DNA from: Callorhinchus milii
Taxonomy: Eukaryota
Assembly (NCBI RefSeq): GCF_018977255.1
Contig: NW_024704755.1
Coordinates: 15,190,001 to 15,254,000, forward strand
DNA: 64,000 nucleotides
Direction of reading: 5' to 3'
Shown here: positions 9,921 through 64,000 of the stretch, in pieces
Position numbering within the stretch: the stretch's first letter is position 1
Layout of the letters: every line of letters begins with the position of its first letter
Notes under the pieces: generated by a model
The model's database searches: none
The model's input: the letters and a program-made list of their open reading frames with translations, nothing else
Told to the model about the DNA's origin: nothing
Translations under genes and position numbers: made by a program

Positions 9921-9921
9921 T

Positions 9922-23925: not shown

Positions 23926-24107
23926 GTTTTTGAGGGAGTTTTTATTTAATATGACCAAATAGAAACATTGAGAAAGATTTATTTTACGATACTGTTTCTC
24001 CTTTCCTTCCCTGGTACCTGTCTCTTTCAGAAAAAAAAACACACAGGATAAAATATACAACTGCTGTAGCTCTTCACTTGACAATGTTGCATTTGGAAAC
24101 CAATAAT

Positions 24108-29270: not shown

Positions 29271-30685
29271 CTAGAAATCACAACATGAACATATTTACAA
29301 TAAATCATTGTCTCTGGAAGTAAGTCACAAACTAAGCCAACTCCTACTCAGAATAGCATCTAACATGCCTTCCCAGGGCACAATTCCAGGGAATCTCACT
29401 AATTCCTTTCAATACTGCATTATAATTTCTTCAATGCTTTGCAATCAATAATCGCTGGATAGTTATTAATCCAAATCTGTTACTTTAATGATAATGAGCA
29501 CAATGGTGAAATTCTTTTAGAAATGTCCATTAATTTTCAACTTCATTCTATGAGTCTCTTGACTTGAAGAACTGCAAACCCATTGTACTAATTGATAACT
29601 ATCAAATTTCTCATGGCATCAAAATCTTACTGTCAACACATTGGAAACCACAACTTTCCATTCTCTCGAAGGATCTTTCAATAATCTATTCCTTCTCATT
29701 ACAGTTTGGATTAGTTGATAGCATGCTTGTCTCTGAGTCAAAAGGTTGTGGGTTTAATGACAACAACTTGCATTTACATAGCACGCTTCATGCGGGTAGC
29801 ATCCTGGCGTGCTTAAAACTGGTCTGGTTTGAAGCTGAGCTGGAAAGTGAGGGGAGGTAAATGAAAGGACAGTTGGAGGGGACAATCTTCTGGTGTGATT
29901 TCAAGATTAGCAAAGAGGGGACAAAATGGAGTGATTGAGGCAGACATTCGGAGCATAGTGTGTAAAGTATGGCCACCAATAGTGGAACAGCGGGGATGAG
30001 TGATATCCATATGACTCAAGCCAGCTGAGTGAGGGCAGGGCAGTGGGTAAAAATAATAAAATATCCTTGCATTTGATATAGCACTTTTCATATCTTTTAG
30101 ATATCTCAAAGTGCTTCACAGAATATATTATAAAGCAAATTGACTGTATATTTTGTGGGTGAAGCAGAGTGTAGTGGAGAGGAGTGTGAGCAGATTGGAG
30201 ATGGAGAGAGGTGATAGGGTGTACAGTGATTTGAAAGTGAGAGTGAGGACCTTGAAATCGATCCATTCTCACCAGGGTGCCAATAGAGTCTGGCTGTCAA
30301 CAGGAAGCCGGTAGAGTCTCGCAAGACCAAATTGATGGTTGAACTCATATAGCCTAGAATGGGGGGTTGCGTTGTTGGAGGTGCTGTCCTTCGTGTGAGA
30401 TATTAAATTGAATTCCCACCCATCTCTTCAGATGGATGATAAGGATCCCATGCCACTACTCCAAAAGAGGAGGAAGTTTCTTCTGGTTTCCTGGCCAGCA
30501 ATCAACCAAACATAGTTTATCATTCACTTTGTGGCTGTTTGTTGGACAACATTGTAGGCAGATGGGATGCCATGTTTGCCTACTAATTACACAATAACTA
30601 CACTTTATAGTAAAAATATGTGAAGTGCTTTAAGACATCACTGCGATGTGAAAGGCACGAAATGCAAGGATTATTAATAACTTAC

Positions 30686-30799
30686 CTCTACAGTTGTTGA
30701 ATTGACATTGTTTCCAAATGATGAAGAGTAGGACAAGAAATGCAAACCCAGCACCTCCACATCCAGAAATCCACAAGCAAAGGGGAATATCCTCACTGG
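30686..30799 (-). CDS. Gene B transmembrane exon (ASEDIPLCLWISGCGGAGFAFLVLLFIIWKQCQFNNCR)
   Basis: tttatag/gtaagt, phase 1-1, 114 nt; homologous to the gene C TM exon. Confidence 0.9.
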
Positions 30800-31169
30800 C
30801 TATAAAACCAAATATGAAATATAACATTTTTTTAACCTCAATAGTGGCCTGCACCACGACTTTGGCTCTTAAATTAGAATTCATCATTAAACAATGCAGC
30901 ATTGCAGCAGCACATGATAATCCCTCCAAAACCAAAAACAATAATAAATTGGTCATTTCCAATCTACGACTGTTTGTGGGACATTAATGTGCACAATTGG
31001 CTGCCGCGTTCGCCCACAAATATACAGTCAATTCACTTTACAGTGTGTTCTGTGAAGCGCTTTGGGATGTCCTCCCGACGTGAAAAGCGCTATATCAAAT
31101 GCAAGGATTATTATTATATTGTTATTAGGATCTAAGATATCTCCTTTCAATTTTTCACATGTAGCAATC

Positions 31170-31720: not shown

Positions 31721-32847
31721 CATGAACAGGGACAAAGTACAGTCAAGGGTGAAAATGCTTGACTGGAAAAGGACTAATTTTGATGGGCTGAAGAGTGGGG
31801 GGAAGAGGAATAGTAGGAATATGACTTGCAATATGAAATATCATAATTTGAATTCATTAAATTAATTAAAATTAATCTCACAGAATATGCACATTAGGCA
31901 GATTGTTTTCTTTATAATTGTTTGCCTGGTGCAGTGTTAGCACTCTGGCCTCTGAATCACAACTTTGCGGGTTCAAGCCCCAGGTTGCTTGAGAATCTCA
32001 ACCAAGCTGAGATTTTCATGCTTCCTACCAACACACGGTAGATTGTTGGAATGGAATGCGTACTCTCTCCATGGAGGGATGCATCCTGCTTAGCTAATTC
32101 AGCTCCAAGGATACCCTGTTTAGTAATGTGTTGCATTGTCAGAGGCGGCGTTCTTCAGATGAGATTTTAAACCGAGTTTCCAACTGCCTGTTCGGGTGGC
32201 TGTTAAAGATCCAATGGCATACTTCAAAAGAGAATGGAGCTTCTCTCAGTGTCCTGGCCATCTTCCAAGTAAAATTGCTCACTCACTCCATGGCTGTTTG
32301 TGGAACACTGCTGTGCGCAGTGAATATAAGTGAATAAGTGAATATCTGAGGGATGTTTACGTGCACCTGGATAAAGTCTCTTCTCTTATCCAATGATGTC
32401 ATGGGATCTTTAACATCAACCTCAACAAGCAGAGGGGACGTCCTCAGTTCAAGCTTTTACCCTCCAACAATGCAGAATTCAGAGAGACACTGAGAGAAAC
32501 TCCCTTCTCTTTTTGAATATTACCACAAAATCTTTTAACATCCACCTGTACAGGCCGATGGAACCTCGGTTTAACATCTCATCTGAAGGATGGCACCCCT
32601 GACAATACAACACAACACTTAGTGAAGTCTCCTTGGAGCTGAACTGACTCCAATATGACATGCCTGGCAGTGGATTGTCAGAATCGAGTCAGCCCTCGGT
32701 GGCAGTCTCGGTAGTCTGGTTCCTGATCCAGGCGGGCTCTCAGTATTCCAGGGCACTGCTCACCCCAGCAACGCACTGAAGTTAGCCTAGGCTATAAAAC
32801 CAATGATACAATAGACGTCTATGTTTAGAGAAATAAAACAATCGTAC

Positions 32848-33150
32848 CTTGTTTAGAAACAGGAACAGAGTAAATAGCGATGATTGGAGACTTGAGGCTT
32901 AGGTGAGATACCACACAGATGTAAACAGCCCCACTCCTCACGGGCTGTGTCTCTTCCAAGGAGCTCGAAACTTGATAACCTCTCCCATCTCTCCCAAGCT
33001 GCTTTCTTTTATTTACAGTGAAAACATTCTTATCATCTTTATACCAAGTGACACTGATATCCTCTGGGTAAAACCCATCCGTTTCACAAACTAGAGTCAG
33101 AGAAGTGGTCGAGTTCCCATCAGACACGATGTTAGGTTGCATCGGGGGAG
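32848..33150 (-). CDS. Gene B C1-set exon (APPMQPNI..TLVCETDGFYPEDISVTWYKD..YICVVSHLSLKSP..)
   Basis: cacag/gtacga, phase 1-1, open frame; canonical C1 motifs. Confidence 0.94.
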
Positions 33151-33641
33151 CTGTGAAAAAACAGATTAGAGAAAAAACGTGCAAATCATATAATTTCTGA
33201 AACTGGAACATCTATTCTCTGTCATATTCCATCCTTCCAGTGCAGTATAATGATTTAGGCTGTAATATTTATGGGAACTGTTGACATTTCCTTCAGGAAT
33301 ATCTTGAATTTAAATTGCTAATACTAACATTTATGGAAATAATTTTACTATTTTGCAACATTTAATGAGACAGCTATAAGAGGCAGTCATGCACTAACAG
33401 TCATGACAGAATGGTCAACTGGGAAATAGAGTTTCATGACTGTTAATCGATGTATTCTATTACAGGACTACATTACGAGGCTACATGCTTGAATGAAATT
33501 GCGAGGTTGGTAAGGTTGATTAAATGATGAGACATCCTCCCCATATGAAAGATGCAATATGCAGTAAATATAAATTGGATTTTGTTCTCAAAAACACGCC
33601 GAGGTTCAATGTGCATTATTTTATATTTGTAATTTGTATAT

Positions 33642-33990
33642 TTAGAGCACTCTCCTCGCACGAGACCTGGGTTTGATTCCCGGTAGGGCGAATTGTTGGG
33701 CAAGTTTCCTTACTTCACACACTTCTGTTTTCCGAGCAGTAAGTAGGAACCTGGTTGTTAGTCGATTGGTGGATTGCTTTACTGGGGATAATAATTATTT
33801 CCAAAAAAATAATAACAATAAATTGGTCACTTCAATCCATGGCTATTTGTGGGACGCTGCTGTGCGCAATTGGCTGCCGCGTTTTCACCCACAAAATATA
33901 CAGTCAATTCACTTTACAGTATACTCTTTGAGACACCTCGAAGACATGACTAGGCGATATATCAAATGCAAGGATTATTATTATTGTTAT
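33642..33990 (+). mobile_element. tRNA/Deu SINE in the gene B V-C1 intron
   Basis: Head, core and tail present. Confidence 0.85.
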
Positions 33991-34174
33991 TTAGGGAATT
34001 TCATTTAGTTTAACACTAAAAGGTAAAGTGCAATACTAAATATAAATTGGCTTCACATATTTATGGTATTTAATTTGTGCTGTGATATTGAAAAAAAGAG
34101 GTAATCAAAAACCCTGTCCTCTGGTTATTTACATTGAGATATATTTAGAACAATAGCAGCGACCACTTACTTAC

Positions 34175-34489
34175 CATGAACAACCAGTGATGATCCAGTT
34201 CCATTTGTCATTCCTCTTCCTCGATATCTCACTCCACAGTAATAGGCTGCTGAGTCCTGGAGGTTGACACTCAGGAGCTGAAGGGAAGCTTCCCCACTCT
34301 GGGTAAGGAACCGTTTCCTGCTGTCTGAGCCCGGCTGGAGAAACTCATTCTCGCCCAGTTTCCACCACTCAACAGTCACAGCAGAATTATCAGAAGGGGA
34401 GAAAATGCATCTGAAGGTAACGTTGGCAGCTACGATCGCAATAGGGCTTTCAAGGGTTTGGGTCACTGTGAGGCGAGCATTGGCGGCAA
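34175..34489 (-). CDS. Gene B germline-joined VJ-type V exon (..NVTFRC..VEWWK..DSAAYYCGVRYRGRGMTNGTGSSLVVH)
   Basis: gacag/gtaagt, phase 1-1, open frame; Cys-Trp-Cys core and J-like GTG-x-x-L-V-V. Confidence 0.94.
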
Positions 34490-34573
34490 CTGTCAAAGAT
34501 GAATACAAATGTTATGTAAACGCATGTGACAAAAAATATAGAAGATATCGATCGAGAGAATAATATCAAATAC

Positions 34574-34628
34574 CTGTGCCAATAGTGAGAATTACTAGGT
34601 ACAGAAACACAATCTGTTTCAAAATCAT
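34574..34628 (-). CDS. Gene B leader exon (MILKQIVFLYLVILTIGT)
   Basis: ATG, hydrophobic core, phase-1 donor gtattt. Confidence 0.88.
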
Positions 34629-34711
34629 TTTGCTCAATGTCAGATGACGCTGGCTCCAAATAAATTCGAAGCTCTGATGGGTTTGGAAAAACTCAGTTTG
34701 CGTTTAATCAG

Positions 34712-41093: not shown

Positions 41094-41249
41094 CTGTAAA
41101 ACAAAGGTACGTGGTTGTTCCGTTGCCTTTCTTGGTCTGTCATCTTTGACCATGGTATTGAATAAGTAGTGGGTTTAAGGAAAAAAAAGTGTCTGCTATG
41201 AAGTTCAAATAGCTAAAGAAATATAACATTCAGTATGTAGATCGAGTTA

Positions 41250-41494
41250 ATAATAATAATAATAATAATCCTTGCATTTGATATAGCGCTTTTCATGTCG
41301 GGAGGACGTCCCAAAGTGCTTCACAGAAAACACTGTAAAGTGAATTGACTGTATATTTTTGTGGGCGAACGTGGCAGCCAATTGCGCACAGCAATGTCCC
41401 ACAAACAGTCGTGGATTGAAAATGACCAATTTATTATTGTTTTGTTTTTTGGAGGGATTATTATTAGGCGTGTGGAGTAAGGAAACTTGCCCAA
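41250..41494 (-). mobile_element. Young tRNA/Deu SINE, head truncated, in a gene C intron
   Basis: Near-identical core and tail. Confidence 0.88.
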
Positions 41495-42901: not shown

Positions 42902-43015
42902 CGTTTTTCTTTTTTAATTGGCATCGCTTCCCAATAATGATCACAAGCGCCAGAAATGCGAAACCACCCGCTGCACATCCAGCCCACAATAAATATCGGA
43001 TTACATTTTTACTGT
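42902..43015 (-). CDS. Gene C transmembrane exon (DSKNVIRYLLWAGCAAGGFAFLALVIIIGKRCQLKKKN)
   Basis: ctccag/gtaaga, phase 1-1, 114 nt. Confidence 0.92.
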
Positions 43016-44167
43016 CTGGAGAAACAGTGTAAACTGAGGTGAAACATTGTGCAGCGCAACGATTTATAGTTCCAGTCATTGAAGTGGAATATAAATTTTA
43101 TGCATATCAGTTATGAATTATATTGGTAGTGATTTAGACAAATATTAAGCAAAATGAGCGGTTTAAATATTACAAATCTAATCTTAATCTTTGTATTTAT
43201 TGAAATAAGAATAAAAATGATAAGAGCATCATTGAAAACAGTTTGTTATTTTGTAGTGTAACTAATGACATCTGATCGCGTGTATTTTTATTAATGCTCT
43301 TGATTTTATTACACAGGCGAGGTGACGCGCAGAACACACAGACACCAAAACGTACCATTGATTTTCACAAAATACAAACCATAAATTGTAGAGTAAGACG
43401 GCTGTACCCAGTGACATCTCATCACAAGCAATGAAACGTGCTCACTTGTTATTAATAAAATGAGGGAACATTATGGAATAAAATTACATTTTGTGATCAA
43501 ACGCCTTGTGTTAAAAAGAGTTTGAAAATTAGACCGCTTTATGATGCTATATTATGTTAAGTTATTATACGTATATAATATGCGTTAGGTTTAGCAAAAC
43601 CTTCACACCAAAAGATACAATGTATTATATGACCATCATCCACAACTCCCTCACCACCATTCTCAACACTTTGGTCTCCCATCATATCAGCCATCGCTTC
43701 CTATCCCCTCAGGTTCCCCAGGACAACAGTCACACTCCATCCCTCAAGACACAGGTAGGTGCTGCTGAACATTGGATGTTCCTCCTGGCTCTATCCTCGG
43801 TCCTCTGCTCTTCACTATCTATCCCACTTGGCGACATCACTGTAGACATGTATTGCATGTTCACATGTACAGTGATGAAACCCAACTCTCCCATCTTCCT
43901 CCACACTCGACCTCCAACTTCGACCCGATTGCTGTCAGACATCAAGTGATGAGATCCGACGTTCTTCCGCTGAACATTAATAATAATCCATGCATTTTAT
44001 ACTGCGACTGATATATCGAATGCAAGGATTAATATTATTATTATTATCACATAATTGTTGTCTCAAATTGCTTCAGACAATTTACTTAATGAATCAATGC
44101 AACTGAACATCCCTATGAAAATTCAATTAACAACAGTTGACTTTTTAATAATCTTTTAGCATCTTAC

Positions 44168-44488
44168 CTGCTTTAGATTTTGGGAAAGCGAAGGTGGCAA
44201 TAGCTGAAGTCTTGAGGCTGATGTGAGACACCAGACAGTTATAAACAGATCCATTCTGGCCAGACTGTGTGACTTCGATAGAGCTCGAGGCCTTATAGAG
44301 ATCCTCTGAGTTCTGCTTCTCAGTGGAACCTGACTCTTCCAGCTTTATTTCTGGTGTTGGCACAATTTCGGTGCCATCTTTATACCAAGTGAAGGTGATT
44401 TCCTTTGGGTGAAACAAAGCAGTTTCACACACAAGAGTCTGAGGCTTAGGTGAATTCCTAGAGAAAATCTTCAGTGGAGTTGGGGGAA
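44168..44488 (-). CDS. Gene C C1-set exon (VPPTPLKIF..TLVCETALFHPKEITFTWYKDG..YNCLVSHISLKT..)
   Basis: ctgcag/gtaaga, phase 1-1, open frame; C1 motifs. Confidence 0.94.
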
Positions 44489-45092
44489 CTGCAGAAAAGA
44501 TAATGGAGGAGAATTGTATTCATTTTGATCAATCAGCAGGAGAAACTTTATTTTAATTTGTATCCAATACATTTCTTTGCAAACTCCTGATTCCTGAGTA
44601 CAATTGGAGGTTTGTTTAGATACACAAATATCCCTCTCACAGCAGCATCGCCTTCCTCCTGCTTTAACTACATTGTGGCTTTGTCAAGTAATATTTATTC
44701 ATAATCTTTATCTTGCATATTATTACTAACTTTGATGATTGGCAGGTGCAAATGATCACTTAAAAATGTCTGTTCAATAGGTTGAACCCGCGAACAATAG
44801 AGGATTCCTGGCAGAGGTGTGCACACTGTGTTAGTGTGGCTCAGTTGGTTGTACTTTCGGCTCTGAGATAGAATTTCGCTTCTGCTGACCGCTGCCGAAC
44901 GGTGGTGATAAAATAATCATTGCATTTGAAAATAGCACCTTATCACATCTTCGAGATGTCTCAAAGCACTTTAAAAACTAGATTGTGAAAGTTATAATGT
45001 ACAAACAATATAAATAACGATATAGCATTCACCGCATTTATTACTTTTCATGTAATTTCTAAATGCCAATTTCGCTCTTCATTCACACTCAC

Positions 45093-45413
45093 CGCACACA
45101 GTTAATCGCGATCCAGATCCTGTTCCGATTATTGATCCCTGACGGACCACTACACAGCGATAGACTCCAGAGTCCTGTGAAATCACATTCAAGAACTGGA
45201 AGAAGCTGCTTCCTTTAGTTTTTACACCAAATAGTTTCCTGTTATCCTCCTTTGTATCCAAATAGCCACTCTCACCCTTCTTATTCCACTGCACCTCCAC
45301 TTCTGAACCGTCTTGAGAGAAGGGGAAGATACAGCGGAAGGTAACATTTGTTCCTCTGATGGCAGCCACATGGTCGGGGATTTGAGTCACTTTCACGGAA
45401 GAATCGCCATCAA
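45093..45413 (-). CDS. Gene C germline-joined VJ-type V exon (..NVTFRC..VQWNK..DSGVYRCVVVRQGSIIGTGSGSRLTVC)
   Basis: tgacag/gtgagt, phase 1-1, open frame. Confidence 0.94.
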
Positions 45414-45576
45414 CTGTCAGAAAATAAAGTCAAACACTGACTTCTCAGGTGGTGAGCCATTGAGAAAACAAATGAGTAAAAGAGGAATAAACGTAAGTAT
45501 GTAAGATAAATGTCACATGGAAACAAGTTTGCAAGTATTTCATAGAATAACCGAACTATAGAATGAACATATATAC

Positions 45577-45628
45577 CTGTTGAAATAATGTGTAAGGCAG
45601 ACAGGTACAGGAAGACAACACTCCCCAT
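45577..45628 (-). CDS. Gene C leader exon (MGSVVFLYLSALHIIST)
   Basis: ATG, phase-1 donor gtatat; encodes the same peptide as the D leader. Confidence 0.88.
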
Positions 45629-45703
45629 GTCTGACTCTGGCTCTGATGGTCTGTCACAAGTGAACGTGGATTATTTGATGCAGAGTAGGTCGCTGTGACA
45701 CTG

Positions 45704-45715
45704 ACTTCCTGTTTC
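45704..45715 (-). promoter_or_regulatory. IRF-Ets composite-like element GAAACAGGAAGT upstream of gene C
   Basis: GAAA-NN-GGAA 76 nt upstream of the ATG, with a CAGGTG E-box nearby. Confidence 0.45.
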
Positions 45716-47689
45716 TTTGGGTTCGCGAAATGTAACAGGTGTGGAGAACGCAATTTGAAATCAGTTTGGCATTAAAATTATGAAAATACTAACCCACCCT
45801 GTTAAGAGCAGAAAAAAGCTTAGTGTATCAAAACTTTAAAAAAATGCTCTGTTTAGCATCATAAATAGATTGTGGTGCTTTGTCCAATCGTAAATGTTGG
45901 TTTGGGCATCAACTCGTGGAACCAGTTGTGTCAGAAACATTCAAATCTGACGAAAAATGTCTTCTACTTTTATCCAGCTGTCCCCTTTTATAGAAATTAA
46001 CCTTTCCTTCTCTTCTGGCATAGTGCTCTGCTTCAAAATCACTCCATCAAAAGGTGTACCCCAGTCCCTCTAAACTCTCCAATTATTGGCCCATCTCCAA
46101 CTTGCCCTTGGTAGCCAAAGTTCTGGCCACTCAACTTTGCTTCCACCATTTTCTACACGCGGTCTGGAAACCATCCTCCTTGTCTTCTGCCAACATCTTC
46201 TGTCTCCAATGGCTTGCTGCACCCTCTCTGCATCACCATCAGTGGCTAAACCTTCAGTTCTTTGTCCACAAAATAAACACAATCATACGAGTTCACAATA
46301 TATCCTGCAAAACTCTTTTGAAACATCTCAACAACATAATAAGGTGATATATCAATCAAGGATTGTACTGTAATTATTATTAGATTCCTATACCCTATCT
46401 TTTGCAAATCCCTCCACCTCGCAATTTGTCTCACTCTTTCCCAATCCGTCTTTGTCCTGACTCAATTCCTACCTCTTGAAACATATCTATCTCCAGCTCT
46501 CTCCCCGCTGCCTTTCCCTTACTTAGTGTCCCACCGAAATGCTTTGAAGCCCACCAAGATTATAGGCTATGCGAAGGATGCCATGATGTAATATTAATCC
46601 TTGTGCCTTATTACGTCTTCAAAACGTCTCAAAACGCTTCACAGAATATACTGTTAAGTGAATTGAATTGATGCTGCATAAATGTGAATTGTTGTTGTTC
46701 ATAGGTAACAAGTAATCTGATAAATGCAGGACATTTTCTTACACAAATCTATGCAAATTATATATTGTAGGGACATAATGGTGATTTGCCAGGTGGCGAT
46801 GCAGACTACATCATATTTATAATATGAAAAGCTATAATCTATCCTTTTGTTTCCCTCGTTCACTGTTGTACCTTTGTTTGACTCGCTCAGGATTTCTGTG
46901 GATTCCTGATACCTCTACTGCCCCTTCAAGCTATTTCTGCCTCAATCCCTGTACCACACTTTCTTTTTAAGTGTCTTCAAATCACATTTGAAGATTTTCC
47001 TCTTCGCCTGTGCCTATGGTCAATTTGCCAGACAGACACATTCACCCACAAAACACACACCACTTCATGTAGTAAGAATGCATATCTGTTTTACATAAAT
47101 AATGATATATTGTGTAGGTACAACCACTTTACTGCAAGATGCACAGCCTAATTGATGGCAAATGTTAATAAGCCATGCACTATATATAATGTGAGTGAGC
47201 GAGACTCTTGTAATGGAATTATCCTTTGACATTTACAAATACAGCAGAACGATTGGTGTTTTTATACTGAGTTGTTTCATGTTAGGTGTATTTTTAGCCA
47301 TTACGTGAAAAGTTCGACGCCCACGCTTCAACTTTTGCACTGTGTTGGACGAATTGCGCCACACTTTGTTGGCCTGCTTTTAAGTTAGCCTGTACCAAGT
47401 GTTGTTTCATTAGTACTGAAGAAACAATGCGTCAAACTGGTCGATATGAGCTAGTTGCTAGTTTGATTCACTGTACATGTCACCAGACATCACCTGATGG
47501 GAATTTTGATTGCACAGCATCCTCAGTCTATCTGTGGATAATGCTCATGGATAGTGTTCGGTGGTGGTCAGCAAAGCAAAATATATGTATGTTTTGGAGG
47601 ATTAGACTTTAAATCCTAGAAGTTCCACACAAAATATTCAACAGGCTATGTTTCATGAATTGTGCACAACCTTGATGTTGCTATTAGTA

Positions 47690-48030
47690 GCGGAAATGGT
47701 CATAGTCATGGAGCCCTGGGTTGAGCAACAGGTCACTTACTTGGCATTTAAGGCTGATCAAACTTGAGCGCGTGAGAAACTGGGATTGTTCAATTGGAGA
47801 AAAGAAGAAGGGGTTATCTTCTTGGTGTTTTCCGAATACAAAGAGTATAAATAAACTGTCCTCAAATAATATGTTTGATGAAGAAAAAGAATGATGCAGA
47901 GGAAGGTGATATTTGTCTCTCTGATGGCAATCACACATTCTGGGATTAATGTTACTTTGACCGAAAAATTACTAATAAGTATTAGAAAAACAAAGACAGA
48001 TTGGTACAGTAACATAACATCCCCTCTCAT
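47690..48030 (-). pseudogene. Locus F: degenerate leader+V of the gene C type (MRGDVMLLYQSVFVFLILISNFSVKVTLIPECVIAIRETNITFLC..)
   Basis: Aligns to the C 5'UTR, leader and V start; C-strand Trp and second Cys lost; stop at 47758. Confidence 0.75.
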
Positions 48031-48464
48031 GATTCTGAGCAGTTTTGACCGTGATGGTCTGTAACAAGCTGATCTGCAACAAGGCTGCACAAATGTTTTG
48101 CCGCAAAAAACGTTTCTGTGTCATTTGACTTCCTGTCTTTGAGGGTTCAGGAAGTTGTGTTTGTGTCTGAGGGCAGTTTGTAAGCACATGTGATCCTTGA
48201 AGTTATGACGAGTTTAACCCAATACAAGTTGACAGACAAATGCAGCAAAACATCGGGGGGAGTGCGGGAGAGAAATAAACATGCATTGTCCAGGATACTG
48301 TACTGACCAAGACCTAAAATCCCACCTATTATTAGAGTGAAAACACATTTTTAATGTACATCAAGCAAAATTGTGAAAAGTTCTTAAAATTAGCCGTCAT
48401 TTGTAAGTCAGTTTTACGCAGTAAACCAACAGAATAATAATAATAAATAAGCTGCCTACTAATA

Positions 48465-48797
48465 ATAATATTAATAATCCTTGCATTTGTTATAGCGCTT
48501 TTCACATCGGGAAGACGTCCCAAAGCGCTTCACAGAATATACTGTAAAGTGAATTGACTGTATATTTGTGGGCGAACGCGCAGCCAATTGCGCACAGCAA
48601 TGTCCCACAAACAGTCGTAGATTGAAAATGACCAATTTATTATTGTTTTTGGTTTTGGAGAGATTATTATTAGGCTCTGTGTGGAGTAAGGAAACTTGCC
48701 CAAGGTCTCACCCTCTGCCTGGAACTGAACTCAGGTCTCTCGCTTGCAAAGCGAGTGCTTAACCACTGAGCTACAGGACTCCACTGAGCTACAGGAC
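48465..48797 (-). mobile_element. Young full-length tRNA/Deu SINE with an 18-nt tandem duplication at its 5' end
   Basis: ccactgagctacaggact occurs twice. Confidence 0.9.
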
Positions 48798-49916
48798 TTA
48801 ACTGACTAAATTCAGATAAGATGGTGTTCCTCGTTGATGAGAGCTGAGCCATGGGTTATGCATTTGAGGCAATGAAGGACTTTAACCAGCTAACACTGTG
48901 TTCTGTACCATTGAAAACGCTGTTTGGAAGCTACATATTGTTTGTTTAGTGAGGAACATCCTATCACTTAGGGATTTTCTCTTGTAGGAATAAATGGTCG
49001 TCGAATAGGAAGGATCCCTGTCACCAGACTGACCTTCCAAATCCCACTCTGAGACAATAAAAATGGTCTTAGAGACCTGATGGGATTTTTCGCCTCTGAT
49101 GACCACACAAATGCAGTTTTTTTGGCAAGAGTCAGTGGGTAATGATGAAGAGAAGGCACCCTGACTTATTATCCCCTCACTATCCCAGGTGGTGAACGCA
49201 AAATGCACACTCTGGGGTCCACAAGTCTTGCATACTAGCACTTAAAGCACCTAATATTCTCAGGAACTGAGTAAACAGAACGCCTCTCGCCGAGGAGAGT
49301 GTGCATTCTATTGCAGGCAGAGATTTCCATGTGTAGGTGGAGCTCCAAGTCTAGTTTTGATATCCTAAGCATGCAATTGAGATTCTGCATGTGTATGATG
49401 GCTAACTGACCAAAAAAAATTGGTAATGGCAGCCAGATGAGGAGATACCTTGTGATGTCCTATGCAGTCCAGTAGGATGTCGATACTCATTGCCAGTGCT
49501 TACAAAAGAATAAGTTCCACTTTGGGCATGATATTGGGGAAAACCAGCAACAATGGACGCAAATCCCAGAATGAAGAGACCGTGGCTTAGAAGTGAAGAT
49601 GTATACCAATCATAAGGTAATTTTAAAACAATGAAACCATGAAAGGTTTGTTCCAGTAGGTGTGAATTCTCAATCTTCAGTGCCATAGAAGTAGTTTCTC
49701 TGTTTTATCTGGAGACAATATGCTCACTGTCTCTATGTACATTTGAATATAGTTGCACAGTAACAACATAATGAATGCAATTGAAAATTTAAAGGAAAGC
49801 CCAATATAATACGTTGAAAATACTGAAGGGAGATTTTTGGTATCCCAACTCCCAGTGTTCGAGTCAAAAGACCAGACAATAAAGTTTTGTGGCTAACTCA
49901 GTTTATTCAAATATAA

Positions 49917-50808
49917 TGTTAGAATATAGAAGTTATAGTCTAGTAATAATGAAATATTAAACAAGTGTAGAATGGAGAAAATAGTGACAGTCATGGGGTA
50001 GGACACATCTGTTTTACTCTGTTTCTGAAGACAGCCTTGGGAAAGAGCAGGAGGTCACCACTTATCAGTAAATAACAACAAAACCTACAGAGGTAACAGT
50101 CCAAGGTACAGGTCGACACAGTATCTCAGCTTAGCAATAAGTCTCTAGATTCTGACAGGGCCTACCAAGCGAGAGAAGGCAACCCTCAAGAATAACGAAC
50201 TAACGAGCAAGTTGTTCAAACTGGAGGCCTTTGGTACCATCCCGGGATACTGATAAGAAATAACCATTCACTTAAAAGGAAGACAGTAATGATCCCACAT
50301 ATCAAAATAACAAGCACCAGATACAGCCCTAAACTGAACAATCTCCTATCTTAGACAGGAGAAAGGGAAGACCTCGTGGAGACTCAGTCAGGCTGGCACC
50401 AAGCCAAATGATTGATTAACCTGAGTACGTGACTGTATCAGAAGTAGTTAGAGGGGCCCAAGGAAGGCCACTTGGAGAAAGGGTATAACTACTGTACCTC
50501 TAGGTGAGAACGGTTAAAAAGACAGGAAGGCCAGAGAGAGAGAGAGACCAGTGTGGAGAGGTCCCTTTCAGAATTACAGGGACGGTGATCTCTGACGTTC
50601 TGTGACTGTCTACAAAGCCTGGTGGTATAATTTGTTAGACATTTGTAGTAACTTGTCAATGCATGTTGTGTTCACTCTGATCAGAATAAACCTTGCTACA
50701 CCATATTGTGATTGTCGTGTCATATTTCGAACTTTTCCCAGCTCTCTCTGTTTTTGTCTCAGATTTCCAGCATCTGCAATATTTTGTGTTTTGTTTATGT
50801 TATTAACA
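49917..50808 (+). mobile_element. Possible solo LTR
   Basis: TGTTA...TAACA termini, TATA-like sequence, AATAAA at 50685; no target-site duplication seen. Confidence 0.35.
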
Positions 50809-51139
50809 GATGTTGAGTGATGGTTTGAGTACAAAATCGTGTTATCTGCCATTTTGATTCATATCAACAAGATTAAAAACTTAACGTTTACAATTTTATG
50901 CAGCTCTGCCTCATAGTGTTTCATTACATATATCATATTCTAACAAGATCTAGAGAAAATATAAAATAATGATTTAAATGTAAAAACAACAATCGCTAGA
51001 TGTGGTATTGTGCCTTTCAAGTCGGGAGGACATCTCAATCACAAGACAAATTGTAAAGGGTAGTGACTGTGTGTTTTGTCGTCGAATATGGCAGCCAATT
51101 TGCAAACAGCAATGATGCACAAACAGTCATGAAAAGAGT

Positions 51140-51340
51140 TGAGCGGATGATTGAGAGAAAGAGAAAGAGTGACTGAGGAGAGAGAAAGAGAGAGAGAGCG
51201 GAGGGAGCGGGGGAAAGAGAGATAGTGATGGAGAGAGAGTGTGCGCGAGTGATTGAGGGGAAAGAGAGAGAGTGATTTTGGAGAGAAAGAGGGGAGAGAG
51301 AGGGAAGAAAATTAGTGATTGAAAGAGAGAGAGAGAAATT
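51140..51340. repeat. GA-rich low-complexity repeat
   Basis: Seen directly. Confidence 0.85.
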
Positions 51341-52214
51341 GTGTGAGCCTCCCTCGGCCACTGCGGAGGGACCGAGGACAGACACCAAATGACGTGCTGT
51401 GCAGTTCCCTCACAGAAAGTTACCTCTTTCCCCAGTGAGAAACTCCTCTAGGTTCTTCATCCCACTTCCAATCCTACCACTTCAACCTGCTGACCAGGCT
51501 GTTCTATTTGCAGAGCTCCCCCTCCCTTTCCACCCCATCTGCCCCAACATCGCCATTTGCCGCTGCTCTCAGGATCTCCATTTTCGGAGTCCCTCCCCTC
51601 TTTCAAGGCACATCAAGAGATCTTGGATACGCTTTCGGTCATCGTTTCCTCTCCCCACCTCCTCCCTTAGTTCCCTCCTCCGGCTCAGGTGCCCAGACAG
51701 TAGTGTCGAGTGTATTCTGCAAAGCGCATTGAGACATCTTGGTGACGTGATGAGGCGCTATATGAAATGCAAGGATTATTATTATTATCCAGTGCTCAGC
51801 AGCCAAAAGGTTGAACCACCCAGTCTTAGATTATGATTTCTAAGTCCCGACACTGGGCTTGAATTGACAAACTTCTGACTCAGAGGTGGGAGTGCTACCA
51901 AATGAGCCAGTCTGATACACAACATATGGTTCACTTCGCACTCCTCAGCGCACTCACTTGAGCTATTTGGATGTATTTTTAAAATGAATGGCTACAAATA
52001 TAACAAATAGTCACTGAACGGATGCCACTTCAATTCAGATAAAAGCTTAACTAGTAGTTTAATAAATTACATTCTCAACATCTTAACATTAGCTTTATGC
52101 AATATCATCGAATCTAACTCGAATGAATGAAATAAGTGGAGTACCAAACACTCTGAGTCACAATATAAATGCAAGCTGGTAAGGCACAATAGTGTTTGGT
52201 AAATATGAGTAAGG

Positions 52215-52925
52215 CAAACCAGAATGTATTAAAAGAGCAATATTGAACCAAAATAGTGGGGTAATTTTGCCACTTTATAAGTCACTGGTGTAACCGCACT
52301 TGGAATACTGTATGCAGTTCTGGTCACCACAATATAAAAAGAGTATTGTAGCAATTGATAGGACCCATAGGAGGGCAACCAAAATAATTGAGGGGATGGA
52401 GGACCTGGACGACAATTAGATAAACTGTGTGTGTTCACGCTGGAGACGAGAGGGGGCAATATGATTACGGTCTTTAAGATTCTGAAGGGGCGAGATAATA
52501 CAGACCATGATAAGCTGTTATATCTTATAGTGAACAGTAGAACGAGAGAACTAAGCCTGTGATTGAAGTGGGGAGGGGGTAAATTCAAAACAAGTCAATA
52601 GAAACACTACTTCATTGAGCGAGTGATAATAATAATAATAATAATCCTTGCATTTGATATAGCGCTTTTCACGTCTTCTCGATGTCTCAAAGCGCTTCAC
52701 AGGATATGCTGTAAAGTGAATAACCGTATATTTGTGGGCAAAACGCGGCAGCCAATTACGTACAGCAAGTGATAAAGTGATGAGCGAGTGATAAACTTAT
52801 GGAACAGGCTACTAATGGAGACAGTGGGGGCAGAAAGCATAGTTTGTTTCAAGCAGAAATTAGATAGATTTCTGCAGGAAAACACCACCTCAGGATATAT
52901 GTAGTTTATAATTTGGCACATATAC
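52215..52925 (+). mobile_element. CR1 LINE 3' fragment with a nested antisense SINE fragment (about 52625-52770)
   Basis: CR1 ORF2 end (LEYCMQFWSP.YKK..QRRATK-like) and 3' tail. Confidence 0.85.
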
Positions 52926-54767
52926 CAAGGAATGCTCGGGTGGTGGAAGGAAGATATACCTTGGGCTTCTTTCGCCTTGCAACTTCTTATCTTCTTAAAT
53001 TGTTGTTGCCAATATTAAAGGTACATTGGAAAATATACCTAAAAATATTTCTCAATGCAAAGATTGGAAGCATATAATAGAAATCCCCTTGTCCTAGACA
53101 TTGCATTCCCCTGAGGCATGGAAAACCGATGATTGACTAAATTACCACTTTAAACCTCATTGAACACTTTATTTAATGCAATTCAAAATGATGAAATCAA
53201 AGCTGTTATGTTCAATTATACTACACGATACAATGAACTTCATTTGTGATTTTAGGCGAGTGATATTTGAAATATCCCACAAAAGTACAATAAGACCTTT
53301 ATTTGTTGCAAAGTCATAGCTGTCATGCTTGCTGAACACCAATAGCTTTATTTTAACATAATAAAATATGTTATTTATGAGACTTGGCGATCAAGTCTCT
53401 GTCGTTCACACACGCAATGCGAAATGTAAAAACAAAAACTTTAAATTTGGGGTAGAATGAAAACTTGACTCAGTTTTCTGGTGCCAAATTTGAAAGTTTG
53501 CCAATCTGGAAACAAATAACATAATAATCCGGGATGCTTTAAGCTAAGAGAGACAAATATTTTATTTTTAAAATGCTGAAAAATATGAAGTGTTCACAGT
53601 GAAATGAACAGTGAAATCACGCAAAGGGAATATAGCTCGAAGTGCAGGTGCTTTCTGGATCCTTTTGTGGATAAGGTTTTGTGGCTTCTGATACATAGAT
53701 TTATTGAAACCATCAACATCATTTTCAGCAGCGGTCAAAAAAATCAAAACATGACTTACTATTGATGTACAACTGACTTGATGATATGTCCCACAATTAT
53801 TTAAAAAACATTATATTGGTTGCGTTTGATATATTAGTAATTGTCATTTAATTGGAGCCAAATCGACCAAGCTGAAATTGCTAATATTTAACGTGTGAAA
53901 AACAAGTAAGAGACGATATTCTAGGTATATGCCAACACCTTAATGGTATAAATCAAAGGCACTCAAATATGTTTGATACAGTATACCAGTTCATAATTTA
54001 CAATCTTCTGTTTCTTCCTATTTCCATCAGCACAATTCAATCACCTCTAATCTTTTCTTCCTTATTTCATCTATAACAAAACAAGTAGTGCAACTGTGAA
54101 TATCACCAATCCTTCGATTCTATGATAAATTGTAATAATTGCTGATTTTCACACAAACAAATTGATGCTTCAATCTGAAATGTTTACCACGAGACTGCAA
54201 ACATAAAATGTTTAGTTTTATTCTAAACGGTTGTTAAACTTATTCAGATAACACGATTTGCAGTTAGATCGCCTTTCACGTTAGAAGGACGTCTGAAAGC
54301 GCTTGGCTCTGTTTGTTGGGCACCGGAGCTGGAGACGGAAGTCAAAGTATTCCATGTGACTGTCTAACATCATTTGTCTCTAAGACAATATCCATTTATT
54401 ATAACACTGGATATATTTTCAACTTATCTTCAAGAATATTCAGCCTCAGGGAAGCAGAGCTTATGAATGACGATATTAACGTTAATATGATAACCAAGTA
54501 ACAGATATGGAAGCGATTGCATGAATATATTGTTCAATATTATTCCAGACACCTGGAAATTTGGAGGAGATATTTATATAACCATTGATTACTTCGGAAT
54601 CCTCCAACACAACAAAACGTAATTTCCCCCTTCTAAACCATTCTATGTCCTGGTTACCAGCGAACAACATGAACTAGTTTCCTGTTCATTGATAATTTCA
54701 TGGATTACGATATCAATACAATAATTGTAAATGAAACAGTATTATTTTGAAACAAAGAATGTCTTAC

Positions 54768-54882
54768 CGTTCAAGTGGTTTGATTCTAATGTGGTCAACA
54801 ATGAAGACTGTCAACACTATCACTACCAAGAAACATAAAATAAACCGAAAAATCATCATATTGTTGAACATTGGACTGGAAT
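54768..54882 (-). CDS. Orphan Arg-containing transmembrane exon (DSSPMFNNMMIFRFILCFLVVIVLTVFIVDHIRIKPLE), activating-receptor type
   Basis: tttgttttccag acceptor and gtaaga donor; phase-1 start; 115 nt; read-through gives ..LER* at 54764. Confidence 0.75.
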
Positions 54883-55729
54883 CTGGAAAACAAATATCGG
54901 ACTGTAAAATGTTTACGTGCAATTTACTGAATAACGACTGTATTGGGAAAATCCACACATTCTTCATCAATTGATATTGGAAGCTACAATGAGACGGACG
55001 AATATTATAAACTGTGCATTCAATTGATTGGAAAATAGCAGCGAATTGTTGTGAATGTCATCGAGCAAACACTTTATTAGTGATGTTAAAGATGTACGGT
55101 TATATATGTTATGGTATCTGTTCCCCTGAGACTGTTTGCTCAGCTTCAAATGTACCAGATTTAACACCTGTACCGACCCGAGCCATCGAGAGGTGGACAC
55201 CATCGTCATCAAACTCATCGCGTTGGACATCTACTATTGTGTGGAAAACTCTATAAAACAACTAAACGAGTTTTATTTTAAGTGCAGTAATTGTTGTTAT
55301 AAAGGAAAAGCAGCAGAAGATTGGCTCCAAAATGTCCCGAGTAAATGGAACGGATTAATGAACGAATATTATTTGTGTTTTATTTGTGAACATACATCAA
55401 TCCAAAAGTCCAATTTCTGATTTCAAACCTAATTGCGTGTGGAACCCGCAGCACTATTGCACTTTAGAAGTTAGTAAATGACAAAAAATAACATTTTGTA
55501 GGAGACATATGTAGTATATAATAACAAAACAAGAACATCCCCAGTTTGAGCTATTTTTCGATTCAAAGACTATATATCTCCAGTTGATTGTGTTGTATAT
55601 ATAGATATATACACACATGGAGTTTACAGCGAGAAACTTGTATGACTATCAATTGCAGCGTCAATAAATGTAAATATAATTCCAGTAACAAGGTGTTTAA
55701 CAACAAAAGACAGAAAGACAAGATGTTTC

Positions 55730-56084
55730 CTGCCATACAATCCCGTGTCGGGTTTACAAACTGTGTCGCTGCGACTCCGGGAGTCCGGAGGTGCCGTGAG
55801 ATGTCAGACAGCAATAACCAGCCCCGCGCTGTCCCGGCGGTATCTCTTCTCTGTGGCTACAGAGCTCGAAACTTCATAAAGTCCCTTTGAATTCTTTCCT
55901 TTATTACAACGTATCCCCAATTTAACTTCACTGCCATCTTTATTCCAAGTGAGTTTGATATCTCCGGGTACAACCCACCCATATCACTCACAATGTGTTC
56001 ACGTCTTCTATTCGGAATAATTCGTTCAGTTTAGGGCAATAAACAGTTTGTGATATACCAGCCCCGGGGGGGGGGGGGGGGGGG
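55730..56084 (-). pseudogene. Decayed C1-set exon (GLYP/GDIKLTWNKDG..GLYEVSSSV..YCCLTSH..LRTPG)
   Basis: tttgtag acceptor; C1 motifs across frameshifts; 19-nt G run at the start; probable donor reads GA instead of GT. Confidence 0.8.
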
Positions 56085-57846: not shown

Positions 57847-58158
57847 CTGCTTTAGGTTTTGGGATTGTGTACATGGTGATAGCTGAAGTCTTGAGGCTGA
57901 CGCGAGAAACTTGACAGGTGTAAACAGACTCTATCTGTGCATCTTCAATAGAGCTCGAGGCCTTATAGAGATCCTCTGAGTTCTGCTTCTCACTGGAACC
58001 TCTCTTTTCCAGCTTTATTTCTGTTGTTGGCGCAATTTTGGTGCCATCTTTATACCAAGTGAAGGTGATTTCCCTTGGGTGAAACAAGGCAGTTTCACAA
58101 AAAAGAGACTGAGACATAGATGAATTCCTAGAGAAAATCTTCAGTGGAGTTGGGGGAA
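57847..58158 (-). CDS. Locus D C1-set exon, intact paralog of the gene C C1
   Basis: Open frame, intact ctgcag/gtaagg sites, near-identical to 44168-44488 with a net 9-nt deletion. Confidence 0.8.
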
Positions 58159-58725: not shown

Positions 58726-58781
58726 GATGGCAGCCACATGGTCGGGGATTTGAGTCACTTTCACCGAAGAATCGCCATCAA
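58726..58781 (-). pseudogene. Locus D truncated V exon (VDGDSSVKVTQIPDHVAAI only)
   Basis: Matches the first 56 nt of the C V exon; the remainder, including both Cys and the donor, is deleted. Confidence 0.9.
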
Positions 58782-58944: not shown

Positions 58945-58996
58945 CTGTTGAAATAATATGTAAGGCCGACAGGTAGAGGAAGACAACACTCCCCAT
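58945..58996 (-). CDS. Locus D leader exon (MGSVVFLYLSALHIIST), intact
   Basis: Paralog of 45577-45628; donor intact. Confidence 0.75.
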
Positions 58997-63579: not shown

Positions 63580-64000
63580 ACAACAACAACAAGATTGCAT
63601 TTATAGAGCGCCTTTCACATCGGGAGGACGTCCCAAGGCGCTGGACTGTTGGGTCGGGACACGAGCAGGGGGGGCAATGGTCAGGGTGAGGGGAGGGAAG
63701 GGAGGGAGCGAGGAGGGAGTAGAGAGTCGAGAGGGGAGCTGAAGGCACGGTTGAAGAGAAAGGTCTTGAGACTGGCCTTGAAGGAGGAAAGGGAGGAAGC
63801 GGCGAAGGCACTGGGGGATGGAGTTCCAGAGCCTCGGGGCTGAGAGGCTGAAAGGGTGGTTAGGGCGTGGGATGTGGAGCAGACTGGAACCAGAGGAAGG
63901 GAGGGTACGGGCAGGTAAGTAAGGGGATAGTAGGTCGGAGAGGTAGGAGGCCGTAAAGGGCCTTCTAGGTGAGGATGAGGATCTTGAGTTCGATCCTCTG
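63580..64000 (-). mobile_element. L2 LINE 3' end, running out of the window
   Basis: Reverse complement of the L2 ORF2 C-terminus and (TTG)n tail. Confidence 0.9.

What the first reader, a model, noticed from the sequence alone, without database searches (positions are those of the whole stretch)
54764..54884. Activating-type TM exon with an N-terminal Arg and a very short tail
Seen: clean splice sites, phase-1 start, NNMMIFRFILCFLVVIVLTVFIV followed by DHIRIKPLE(R*), with no Tyr. Known: FcR-gamma/CD3-zeta-coupled receptors carry Arg near the TM start (NKp46, GPVI, Fc-alpha-RI, LILRA: NLxRxxL..LV), NKp30 has a TM Arg, and TCR-alpha has FRILL. Inference: the activating arm of the family, coupling through FcR-gamma/zeta rather than the DAP12 (Lys) route of SIRP-beta.
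Basis: partly seen in the sequence, partly recalled or inferred. Interest (0 to 1): 0.8.

Follow-up and report, generated by a model that had tools for sequence, protein, structure and literature searches.

The report
Arg-transmembrane exon of shark SIRP-like receptor
This is a real, unannotated transmembrane exon of the "activating" type in an elephant-shark cluster of SIRP-like immune receptor genes, and it matches an exon class conserved across sharks; however, the gene copy it sits in has lost its ligand-binding V exon and is probably dead.

Summary
On the minus strand, 54882-54768 is a 115-nt exon-like unit. It has a pyrimidine-tract/AG acceptor in phase 1, an Arg five residues into a 21-residue hydrophobic segment, a 10-residue Tyr-free tail, and a TAA overlapping a GTAAGA donor.

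It is not chance. A generic TM-exon scan finds only this and two other TM exons in the window, one of them annotated (null 0.01 per window at its score class). An HMM built only from elasmobranch proteins hits it at E=1e-11, against a best of 14.7 bits in 100 simulated windows.

The window is Callorhinchus milii MU249845.1:15,190,001-15,254,000, a cluster of SIRP-like V-C1 receptor genes. The exon belongs to a class found here in 15 predicted proteins from 10 shark species: [R/Q], exactly 16 hydrophobic residues, then usually [D/E]H, a very short tail, and often a stop at the donor. Paralogues in the same clusters carry uncharged TMs and ITIM tails.

The "activating arm" reading is therefore supported by homology. 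FcR-gamma/zeta coupling is inferred, not tested.

This copy belongs to B', a gene whose V exon is deleted after 13 codons and whose intron holds a dead C1 exon. No gene model uses the exon. Two more copies lie within about 41 kb.

The parts
54768..54882 (-). Arg-TM exon, 115 nt. It encodes the stalk (D)SSPMFNN, the TM segment MMIFRFILCFLVVIVLTVFIV and the tail DHIRIKPLE(R). It starts in phase 1.
   Evidence: Searches give the sequence, splice sites and scan. Searches give the HMM result: E=1.1e-11, 41.3 bits, null maximum 14.7 bits.
54883..54897 (-). Acceptor: pyrimidine tract tatttgttttcc followed by AG (54884-54883).
   Evidence: The same ttttccag|AT start is seen in the Heptranchias P0179 exon.
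54761..54769 (-). CG|GTAAGACA: the donor GT (54767-54766) overlaps an in-frame CGG TAA stop (TAA at 54766-54764).
   Evidence: GGTAAGACA is identical in the great white shark exon. A stop lies at the donor in Mustelus and Heptranchias and two codons upstream of it in S. canicula.
54845..54847 (-). CGG codon for the intramembrane Arg. It is followed by exactly 16 hydrophobic residues and then Asp-His.
   Evidence: the 16-residue spacing is the same in all 15 elasmobranch members and in both distinct C. milii exon sequences.
55750..55992 (-). Dead C1-set exon with an in-frame stop and a frameshift. It lies in the intron about 870 bp upstream of the TM exon and is a paralogue of the C1 exon of P0018.
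   Evidence: A frameshifted (broken) copy of this exon also sits beside the TM paralogue in L007.
57847..58158 (-). B' C1-set exon. The ORF, both Cys residues and both splice sites are intact. It ends in phase 1.
58726..58781 (-). B' V-exon remnant. The acceptor and the first ~13 mature V codons (VKVTQIPDHVAAI, after a short VDGDSS lead-in) are intact. Homology to the V exon of B then stops, and the reading runs into a stop.
58945..58996 (-). B' leader exon (MGSVVFLYLSALHIIST-), intact, with its donor.
42902..43015 (-). For comparison: the annotated inhibitory-type TM exon of gene B (LOC103185896). It encodes DSKNVIRYLLWAGCAAGGFAFLALVIIIGKRCQLKKKN and is followed by ITIM/ITSM exons at about 41.1 kb and 40.2 kb.
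43366..55610 (-). Block that recurs at 99.08% identity about 41 kb upstream on the minus strand (L007:1-12266). It carries an identical second copy of the TM exon.

Best explanation
The segment is a genuine terminal-coding exon, covering stalk, transmembrane helix and very short tail, of a SIRP-like V-C1 immune receptor gene in the elephant shark.

It belongs to an exon class shared with sharks. In that class an Arg sits about five residues into the helix, followed by exactly 16 hydrophobic residues and usually an Asp/Glu-His pair. The protein then ends after a handful of residues, often at a stop placed on the exon's own splice donor.

Receptors with this exon are the short-tailed, charged-TM partners of paralogues in the same clusters that carry uncharged helices and ITIM/ITSM tails. 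This is the classic activating/inhibitory pair.

By the established rule for such receptors, the buried Arg would dock onto the paired Asp residues of an ITAM adaptor dimer (the FcR-gamma/CD3-zeta type). The adaptor would be needed for surface expression and signalling. This step is inferred.

In this particular copy the exon belongs to gene B'. B' keeps its leader and C1 exons but has lost almost all of its V exon. It is therefore most likely a decayed copy that makes no ligand-binding receptor. The exon itself is still intact.
For: Shown:
- The exon anatomy is as described and is unlikely by chance.
- It is homologous to the elasmobranch TM exon class: HMM E=1.1e-11, while the window's two other TM exons do not score.
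- 15 class members in 10 shark species and both distinct C. milii exon sequences share the [R/Q]-16-polar-pair layout and short tails.
- The phase-1 acceptor, exon length and stop at or near the donor are conserved in four shark genes.
- Inhibitory paralogues with ITIM/ITSM tails lie in the same window and family.
- The unit 'B-type C1, intron with dead C1, Arg-TM exon' occurs twice (window 57.8-53.9 kb and L007:12441-16565). The diverged TM paralogue (82.6% identity) is also 115 nt, has no indel and has a stop at the same place.
- The B' V exon is deleted.
- No gene model covers the exon, and no database protein contains it.

From the literature: an Arg near the top of the TM couples CD89, NKp46 and NKp30 to gamma/zeta dimers, and a central Lys couples receptors to DAP12 (PMC13107469).
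Against: - There is no transcript evidence for any C. milii copy.
- Between the two diverged C. milii paralogues the changes are 17 nonsynonymous to 1 synonymous (pN 0.195, pS 0.042). Codon-level purifying selection is therefore not demonstrable. The only constraint visible is the absence of indels and stops, and the fact that all core changes keep hydrophobicity.
- Two class members have Gln in place of Arg.
- The shark proteins are automated RefSeq predictions, not characterised receptors.
It is a lead only.
Confidence: 0.6

Rival explanations
1. This copy is functional as it stands. B' transcripts would skip the V remnant and the dead C1, since all these exons are phase 1. The product would be a V-less leader-C1-Arg-TM protein of about 160 aa. 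Alternatively, the exon is reached from intact Ig exons further upstream.
For: The leader, C1 and TM exons of B' all keep their ORFs and splice sites. V-less and C1-less isoforms are annotated in this family: P0022 and P0002 in C. milii, and P0171 and P0114 in sharks, the latter two carrying the Arg-TM. The exon scores as well against the class HMM (41-46 bits) as working shark members that were not in the training set (30-56 bits).
Against: The V-remnant acceptor is intact and leads into a stop. No gene model lies between 45.6 kb and 67.3 kb. The next upstream gene (P0001) ends with its own ITIM tail at about 67.3 kb. A' upstream is dead, with stops and lost Cys residues.
Confidence: 0.2
2. 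The Arg-TM class is not an adaptor-coupled activating module. The Arg could be an interfacial residue inherited from the family's juxtamembrane motif (xIRYLL, also present in the inhibitory members). The short-tailed proteins would then be decoys or intracellular or ER-resident partners, as the 'tapasin-related' names hint.
For: Inhibitory members also have an Arg just before the helix (NVIRYLL, ITRYLL). Two class members have Gln instead of Arg. One shark tail ends KEKCN, which fits a KxKxx ER-retrieval motif. No adaptor test exists.
Against: In the inhibitory members 22 hydrophobic residues follow the Arg, so it can sit outside the bilayer. In this class only 16 follow and about four hydrophobic residues precede, so the Arg must be buried. 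The invariant 16-residue spacing across all sequences suggests a fixed helix register. The KxKxx ending is not general across members.
Confidence: 0.13
3. The exon couples to DAP12 or DAP10 rather than to FcR-gamma/zeta.
For: Mammalian SIRP-beta uses DAP12. NKG2D uses an Arg with DAP10 (PMC13107469).
Against: DAP12 partners use a centrally placed Lys. Here the basic residue is an Arg in the top quarter of the helix, as in CD89, NKp46 and TCR-alpha. The R-16-acidic spacing equals that recalled for NKp46, CD89, GPVI and LILRA2 (from memory).
Confidence: 0.06
4. It is a chance open reading frame in T-rich non-coding DNA.
For: The strand is T-rich. SINE-derived ORFs in the window also look hydrophobic.
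Against: HMM E=1.1e-11, against a maximum of 14.7 bits in 6.4 Mb of simulated sequence. The splice-aware scan has a null of 0.01 per window. A diverged paralogue has the same length, phase and stop.
Confidence: 0.01

Closest known systems
Predicted elasmobranch V-C1 receptors with an Arg-TM. Examples: XP_041048274 (Carcharodon, 'NCR3 ligand 1-like'), XP_038662025 (Scyliorhinus canicula, 'SIRP-alpha-like'), XP_067905015 (Heterodontus, 'tapasin-related-like'), XP_072403667 (Chiloscyllium punctatum).
   Same: The TM exon is homologous (HMM E=1e-11). It shares the phase-1 acceptor, the [R]-16-[D/E]H layout, the very short tail and a stop at or near the donor. The conserved GGTAAGACA donor is shared with the great white shark.
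   Different: Those genes have intact leader-V-C1 exons and gene models. This copy has no model and a deleted V exon. It is the first instance of the class seen in a holocephalan within the sets searched here. Six stalk residues and several core residues differ.
Mammalian FcR-gamma/zeta-coupled Ig receptors of the LRC/NCR type (CD89, NKp46, GPVI, LILRA2, PIR-A).
   Same: Type I Ig-domain receptor logic: an Arg near the top of the helix, about 16 hydrophobic residues and then an acidic residue, a short tail with no motif, and ITIM-bearing paralogues in the same cluster (rule from PMC13107469; spacing from memory).
   Different: The ectodomain is V-C1 (SIRP-like), not C2/I-set LRC domains. There is no QNLIR/NLxR stalk motif. 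Sequence similarity of the helix is not significant (about 14 bits, equal to the random maximum). Adaptor binding is untested.
Mammalian SIRP family (SIRP-alpha, -beta, -gamma).
   Same: The cluster's V-C1 ectodomains hit SIRP-alpha and SIRP-gamma best among solved structures (E=2.6e-10 and 3.3e-8). The V domain ends in a J-like GTGS.L.V motif. Inhibitory members carry ITIM/ITSM tails, and the cluster has an activating/inhibitory pair logic. The dead second C1 in the intron is compatible with an older V-C1-C1 layout.
   Different: There is one working C1, not two. The activating helix uses an N-terminal Arg, whereas SIRP-beta uses a Lys with DAP12. Orthology to the mammalian SIRP locus was not tested.

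Membership tests
Chondrichthyan V-C1 receptor Arg-TM exon class | Sequence match to a profile built from members of other species | tested here: met
   The HMM from seven elasmobranch peptides gives 41.3 bits, E=1.1e-11 in a six-frame search. The next hit is E=0.31 and the simulated maximum is 14.7 bits.
Chondrichthyan V-C1 receptor Arg-TM exon class | [R/Q], then exactly 16 hydrophobic residues, then a polar pair (usually D/E-H) | tested here: met
   The exon reads R-FILCFLVVIVLTVFIV-DH. The spacing is the same in all 15 shark members.
Chondrichthyan V-C1 receptor Arg-TM exon class | Separate exon with a phase-1 acceptor; coding ends at or just after the exon's donor | tested here: met
   The acceptor is ag|AT in phase 1, and CGG TAA overlaps the donor. 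Shark genes are compared.
Chondrichthyan V-C1 receptor Arg-TM exon class | Joined in one gene to intact leader, V-set and C1-set exons | tested here: not met
   The B' V exon is deleted after 13 codons. A dead C1 lies in the intron. There is no gene model. The exon is a member of the class, but the gene copy is incomplete.
ITAM-adaptor-coupled activating receptors (FcR-gamma/CD3-zeta type) | Basic residue (Arg) in the upper part of a single TM helix | tested here: met
   The Arg is residue 5 of the 21-residue hydrophobic segment. The rule is stated in PMC13107469.
ITAM-adaptor-coupled activating receptors (FcR-gamma/CD3-zeta type) | Short cytoplasmic tail without a signalling motif | tested here: met
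   The tail is DHIRIKPLER, with no Tyr. Class tails are mostly 4-16 aa without Tyr motifs.
ITAM-adaptor-coupled activating receptors (FcR-gamma/CD3-zeta type) | Physical association with an Asp-pair adaptor dimer, and adaptor-dependent surface expression and signalling | not testable with these tools
   This needs co-expression and co-immunoprecipitation. The presence of the adaptor genes in C. milii was also not checked here.
DAP12-coupled receptors (SIRP-beta type) | Centrally placed Lys in the TM helix | tested here: not met
   The helix has no Lys, and the only basic residue is an N-terminal Arg.
SIRP family | V-set domain with a J-like end, plus C1-set domains | tested here: met
   Pfam finds V-set and C1-set in the cluster's exons. 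The best solved-structure hits are SIRP-alpha and SIRP-gamma.
SIRP family | Two C1-set domains, and orthology or synteny with the tetrapod SIRP locus | tested here: inconclusive
   Annotated cluster genes have one C1. A second, dead C1 lies before the TM exon. Synteny was not examined.

The most novel reading that the evidence does not exclude
The Arg-16-acidic transmembrane exon is an ancient, portable 'adaptor-docking' module. It was already present in the common ancestor of chimaeras and sharks, and it may share ancestry with the FcR-gamma-coupling helices of mammalian NKp46, CD89 and GPVI. In the elephant shark it is still being recombined with new ectodomains. About 41 kb away, a 99%-identical copy of the inhibitory receptor's leader-V-C1 has been placed upstream of a paralogue of this exon. 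The junction carries a truncated inhibitory TM exon. That would be a freshly made activating twin of an inhibitory receptor, currently hidden inside a fused gene model.
Probability: 0.25. Interest if true: 0.6.

Novelty: new member of a known kind. Interest (0 to 1): 0.4.

Why it matters
Paired activating and inhibitory receptors are central to innate immune recognition, and their activating halves are often missed by annotation because the last exon is tiny. Three points follow.

- The elephant-shark SIRP-like cluster, annotated only with ITIM-bearing or TM-less models, contains at least three unannotated Arg-TM exons.
- The same exon class runs through sharks with an invariant helix register. 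This dates the design to before the chimaera/shark split.
- Gene models in this region (for example XP 'SIRP-alpha-like' P0001) fuse neighbouring genes and skip TM exons.

The result gives a concrete, testable handle on whether adaptor-coupled signalling of the FcR-gamma/zeta type operates in cartilaginous fish. The particular copy flagged is probably a relic, which limits its own importance.

Tried and rejected
- Self-BLAST of 54400-55300 against the window found no second copy. tBLASTn of the peptide found none either. The copies turned out to lie outside the window.
- A word-index search restricted to the exon's 40 residues found no protein sharing three 5-mers. This shows the exon is unannotated but said nothing about distant relatives. 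Those came from the profile search.
- I tested whether the TM exon belonged to the P0018-type gene whose C1 resembles the dead C1. Homology between the window and the P0018 locus stops at the end of the C1 exon. That locus has no TM-exon candidate or HMM hit within 10 kb.
- I considered assigning the exon to A' because shark Arg-TM receptors of the P0070 group have A-type V domains. I rejected this in favour of B', because the unit 'B-type post-C1 intron, dead C1, Arg-TM' is duplicated as a block.
- Poly(A) signals downstream are uninformative in this AT-rich DNA.
- Codon-level selection between paralogues gave pN/pS above 1 on 18 changes, which is not significant and does not support constraint.
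- Locus look-ups for P0020, P0062 and P0003 were not on record.
- Literature searches for a description of this shark family, or for adaptors in the elephant shark, found nothing specific.
- Pfam finds nothing for the exon peptide.
Full report
**1. What is there**

Read on the minus strand, 54897-54761 is tatttgttttccag|ATTCCAGTCC...CTTGAACG|gtaagaca.

- The exon is 54882-54768, 115 nt.
- Its first two bases complete a codon begun in the previous exon (phase 1). Every Ig exon of the family ends in that phase.
- It encodes (D)SSPMFNN-MMIFRFILCFLVVIVLTVFIV-DHIRIKPLE.
- The donor GT overlaps an in-frame CGG TAA. An unspliced message therefore ends ...KPLER*.
- There is no Tyr.

**2. Chance**

The hydrophobic segment is the third-highest of 14 in six frames. 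The two above it are SINE-derived.

A generic scan required a hydrophobic 21-mer, a phase-1 AG with a pyrimidine tract, and a GTRAG donor. It returns exactly three units in the window:
- this exon;
- the annotated TM exon of LOC103185896 (43015-42902);
- the TM exon of the plus-strand gene (18537-18641).

Locally composition-matched simulations give 0.125 hits per window at the loosest threshold, 0.01 at KD>=2.3 and 0 of 200 at the exon's own score. Those criteria were chosen after seeing the exon, so the independent test in section 4 matters more.

**3. Where the window comes from**

The V and C1 exons of the window are Pfam V-set and C1-set. They hit SIRP-alpha and SIRP-gamma best among solved structures.

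A database search identifies Callorhinchus milii. P0002 (LOC103185896) is encoded exactly by the window. Locus L001 equals window 30083-55628, so the window is MU249845.1:15,190,001-15,254,000 of GCA_018977255.1.

Map of the window:

| Strand | Unit | Exons (window coordinates) |
|---|---|---|
| Minus | A' (dead) | V 62022-61759 with stops and lost Cys; C1 61404-61222 |
| Minus | B' | leader 58996-58945; V remnant 58781-58726; C1 58158-57847 |
| Minus | dead C1 | 55992-55750 |
| Minus | the TM exon | 54882-54768 |
| Minus | decayed V | 48033-47761 |
| Minus | B (inhibitory) | V 45.4 kb; C1 44.4 kb; uncharged TM 43.0 kb; ITIM/ITSM exons 41.1 and 40.2 kb |
| Minus | A | V 34.4 kb; C1 33.0 kb |
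| Plus | V-C1-TM gene | 14.8-18.6 kb |

**4. Homologues**

No paralogue of the exon exists inside the window. No protein among 5.8 billion of 0.55-1.75 times the 249-aa query's length shares three 5-mers with it.

A profile search with TM-less V-C1 family members, followed by inspection of C-termini, revealed a subfamily of shark proteins whose helices look like the exon. Examples:
- INIFRLILGIVVMVLGTAFIVDHLK
- THRFILAFLVILILTTIIVEHLK
- LMIVRLLMAFLVILALTAIIVDHVK

They come from Carcharodon, Cetorhinus, Mustelus, two Scyliorhinus species, two Chiloscyllium species, Heterodontus and Heptranchias.

An HMM built only from seven of these peptides was run on the six-frame translation of the window plus an unrelated C. 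milii locus.
- It hits the exon's ORF at 41.3 bits, E=1.1e-11.
- The next hit is E=0.31.
- The window's two other TM exons do not score.
- The best score in 100 simulated windows is 14.7 bits.

All 15 shark members and both distinct C. milii exon sequences have exactly 16 residues between [R/Q] and a polar pair, usually D/E-H. Arg is present in 13 of the 15 shark members. Tails are mostly 4-16 residues without Tyr motifs.

**5. Exon structure in sharks**

| Species | 3' end of the TM exon |
|---|---|
| Great white shark | Phase-1 exon ending ...TTT AAA G\|gtaagaca, spliced to a last exon of nine codons |
| Mustelus | Coding ends TTT TAA AG\|gtaaga |
| Heptranchias | Coding ends CTC TAA AT\|gtaaga |
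| S. canicula | TGA two codons before the same donor |
| C. milii (this exon) | GAA CGG TAA on the donor |

The C. milii layout is therefore the family's usual one, not a defect. The stalk length (12 residues before the Arg) and the ttttccag|AT acceptor equal those of a Heptranchias member.

**6. Which gene it belongs to, and is that gene alive?**

Homology between B' and B stops at 56802 versus 43143, just short of B's own TM exon.

Locus L007 covers window-equivalent 57.3-96.6 kb. It shows that the stretch from the end of the B' C1 exon, through the dead C1, to beyond the TM exon (window 57827-53874) is itself a duplicated unit, at L007:12441-16565 with 82-96% identity.

The unit contains a paralogous TM exon at L007:15495-15609.
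- It encodes YRGMSNDVMVFRFVLCFFLLIVLTIFIVDCIRAKPLE(W*).
- It is 115 nt with no indel, and its stop is at the same position.
- It is 82.6% identical to the window exon.
- The dead C1 beside it is also frameshifted.

The exon is therefore the TM exon of a B-type 'activating' gene lineage.

In the window copy (B') the V exon is lost after 13 codons and replaced by an inverted intron fragment. The leader and C1 exons keep their splice sites.

No gene is called between 45.6 kb and 67.3 kb.

I conclude that the exon is real but its gene copy is most likely decayed. A V-less product remains possible, because all exons are phase 1 and V-less isoforms are annotated in this family.

Evidence for continuing constraint on the exon is modest.
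- Both diverged copies stay open and indel-free while their flanks are full of indels.
- All core changes keep hydrophobicity.
- However, substitutions are 17 nonsynonymous to 1 synonymous.

**7. Mechanism**

*Shown.* The Arg is buried: four hydrophobic residues precede it and only 16 follow. In the inhibitory paralogues 22 follow a juxtamembrane Arg. The tail is short and has no motif. ITIM-bearing paralogues lie in the same cluster.

*Inferred from established knowledge* (PMC13107469). CD89 binds the FcR-gamma dimer through an Arg near the top of its helix and needs both adaptor Asp residues. NKp46 and NKp30 are taken to use zeta/gamma in the same way. DAP12 partners use a central Lys.

The R-16-acidic spacing equals what I recall for NKp46, CD89, GPVI and LILRA2. 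Those helices score 9-14 bits against the shark HMM, against 2.6 bits for the inhibitory helix of B. Since 14 bits equals the random maximum, this is a lead, not evidence of homology.

Adaptor binding was not and could not be tested. I also did not verify that the adaptor genes exist in C. milii.

**8. Verdict**

It is an activating-type TM exon of a conserved chondrichthyan class, and intact orthologue-type genes exist in sharks. This copy sits in a V-deleted, unannotated gene, and adaptor coupling is inferred.

It is a new member of a known kind, with moderate interest.

Noticed in passing
window 43366-55610 and L007:1-12266 (MU249845.1, about 15,274,300-15,286,562): A 12.3-kb block recurs about 41 kb away at 99.08% identity. 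It holds the TM exon, a decayed V, and the leader, V and C1 exons of gene B. This is either a very recent segmental duplication or an assembly or haplotype artefact.
   Followed up: partly
L007:10001-29291 (gene model P0001, 489 aa): The RefSeq 'SIRP-alpha-like' model joins two neighbouring genes (V-C1 of B2 to V-C1 and tail of B3). It skips both an Arg-TM exon (L007:15495-15609) and an inhibitory TM exon (L007:26613-26726), so the modelled protein has no TM helix at all.
   Followed up: partly
L007:12380-12439: Half of an inhibitory-type TM exon (DSKSVTRYLLWAGCAAGGFA) lies immediately before the point (12441) where the older 'post-C1 intron, dead C1, Arg-TM' unit begins; the 99% block itself ends about 115 bp upstream, at 12266. 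This looks like the scar of an unequal crossover that put an inhibitory receptor's ectodomain in front of an activating TM exon.
   Followed up: partly
window 49728-49822 (-): A second exon-like unit has a phase-1 acceptor, a GTRAG donor and a Lys inside a weaker hydrophobic stretch (FSTYYIGLSFKFSIAFIMLLLCNYIQMYIET, KD 1.70). It lies within the range expected by chance and is also present in the 99% duplicate.
   Followed up: no
window 18537-18641 (+), with V 14849-15166 and C1 17826-18167: The plus-strand V-C1 gene has an uncharged TM exon (…FAWWIYVCVGAGALLLLLPIVICACKCR). This 'WWIY' helix type recurs in other family proteins from the profile search, whose species were not looked up (P0066, P0078, P0092, P0153).
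   Followed up: no
window 32827-34630 and 30684-30911 (-): Gene A is annotated as a 231-aa V-C1 protein with no TM. About 2 kb downstream lies an inhibitory-type TM-like ORF (…CLWISGCGGAGFAFLVLLFIIWKQCQFNNCRG) that fails the splice-site criteria. The V domain of A is the best window match to the shark Arg-TM receptors of the P0070 group.
   Followed up: partly
window 47761-48033 (-): A decayed leader plus V sequence runs without the usual leader-V intron. It may be a processed or rearranged pseudogene fragment.
   Followed up: no
window 52617-52768, 48460-48600, 41240-41394, 24103-24245 and many others: A SINE-like repeat of about 150 bp, with an (ATT)n-type run, translates as …[14 protein letters not shown]… It produces false TM-like ORFs on both strands.
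   Followed up: no
window 8839-10618 and 25525-26457 (+); also 63581-64000: GC-richer stretches with strong negative GC skew encode reverse-transcriptase-like ORFs (…YVDDTQLY…). They are LINE fragments, repeated three times in the window.
   Followed up: no
window 42902-43015 (-) and family proteins: Inhibitory members share a juxtamembrane Arg motif (NVIRYLL, ITRYLL, SSRFLM) just outside a 22-residue helix. The Arg of the activating class may derive from this position after the helix was shortened or shifted.
   Followed up: no
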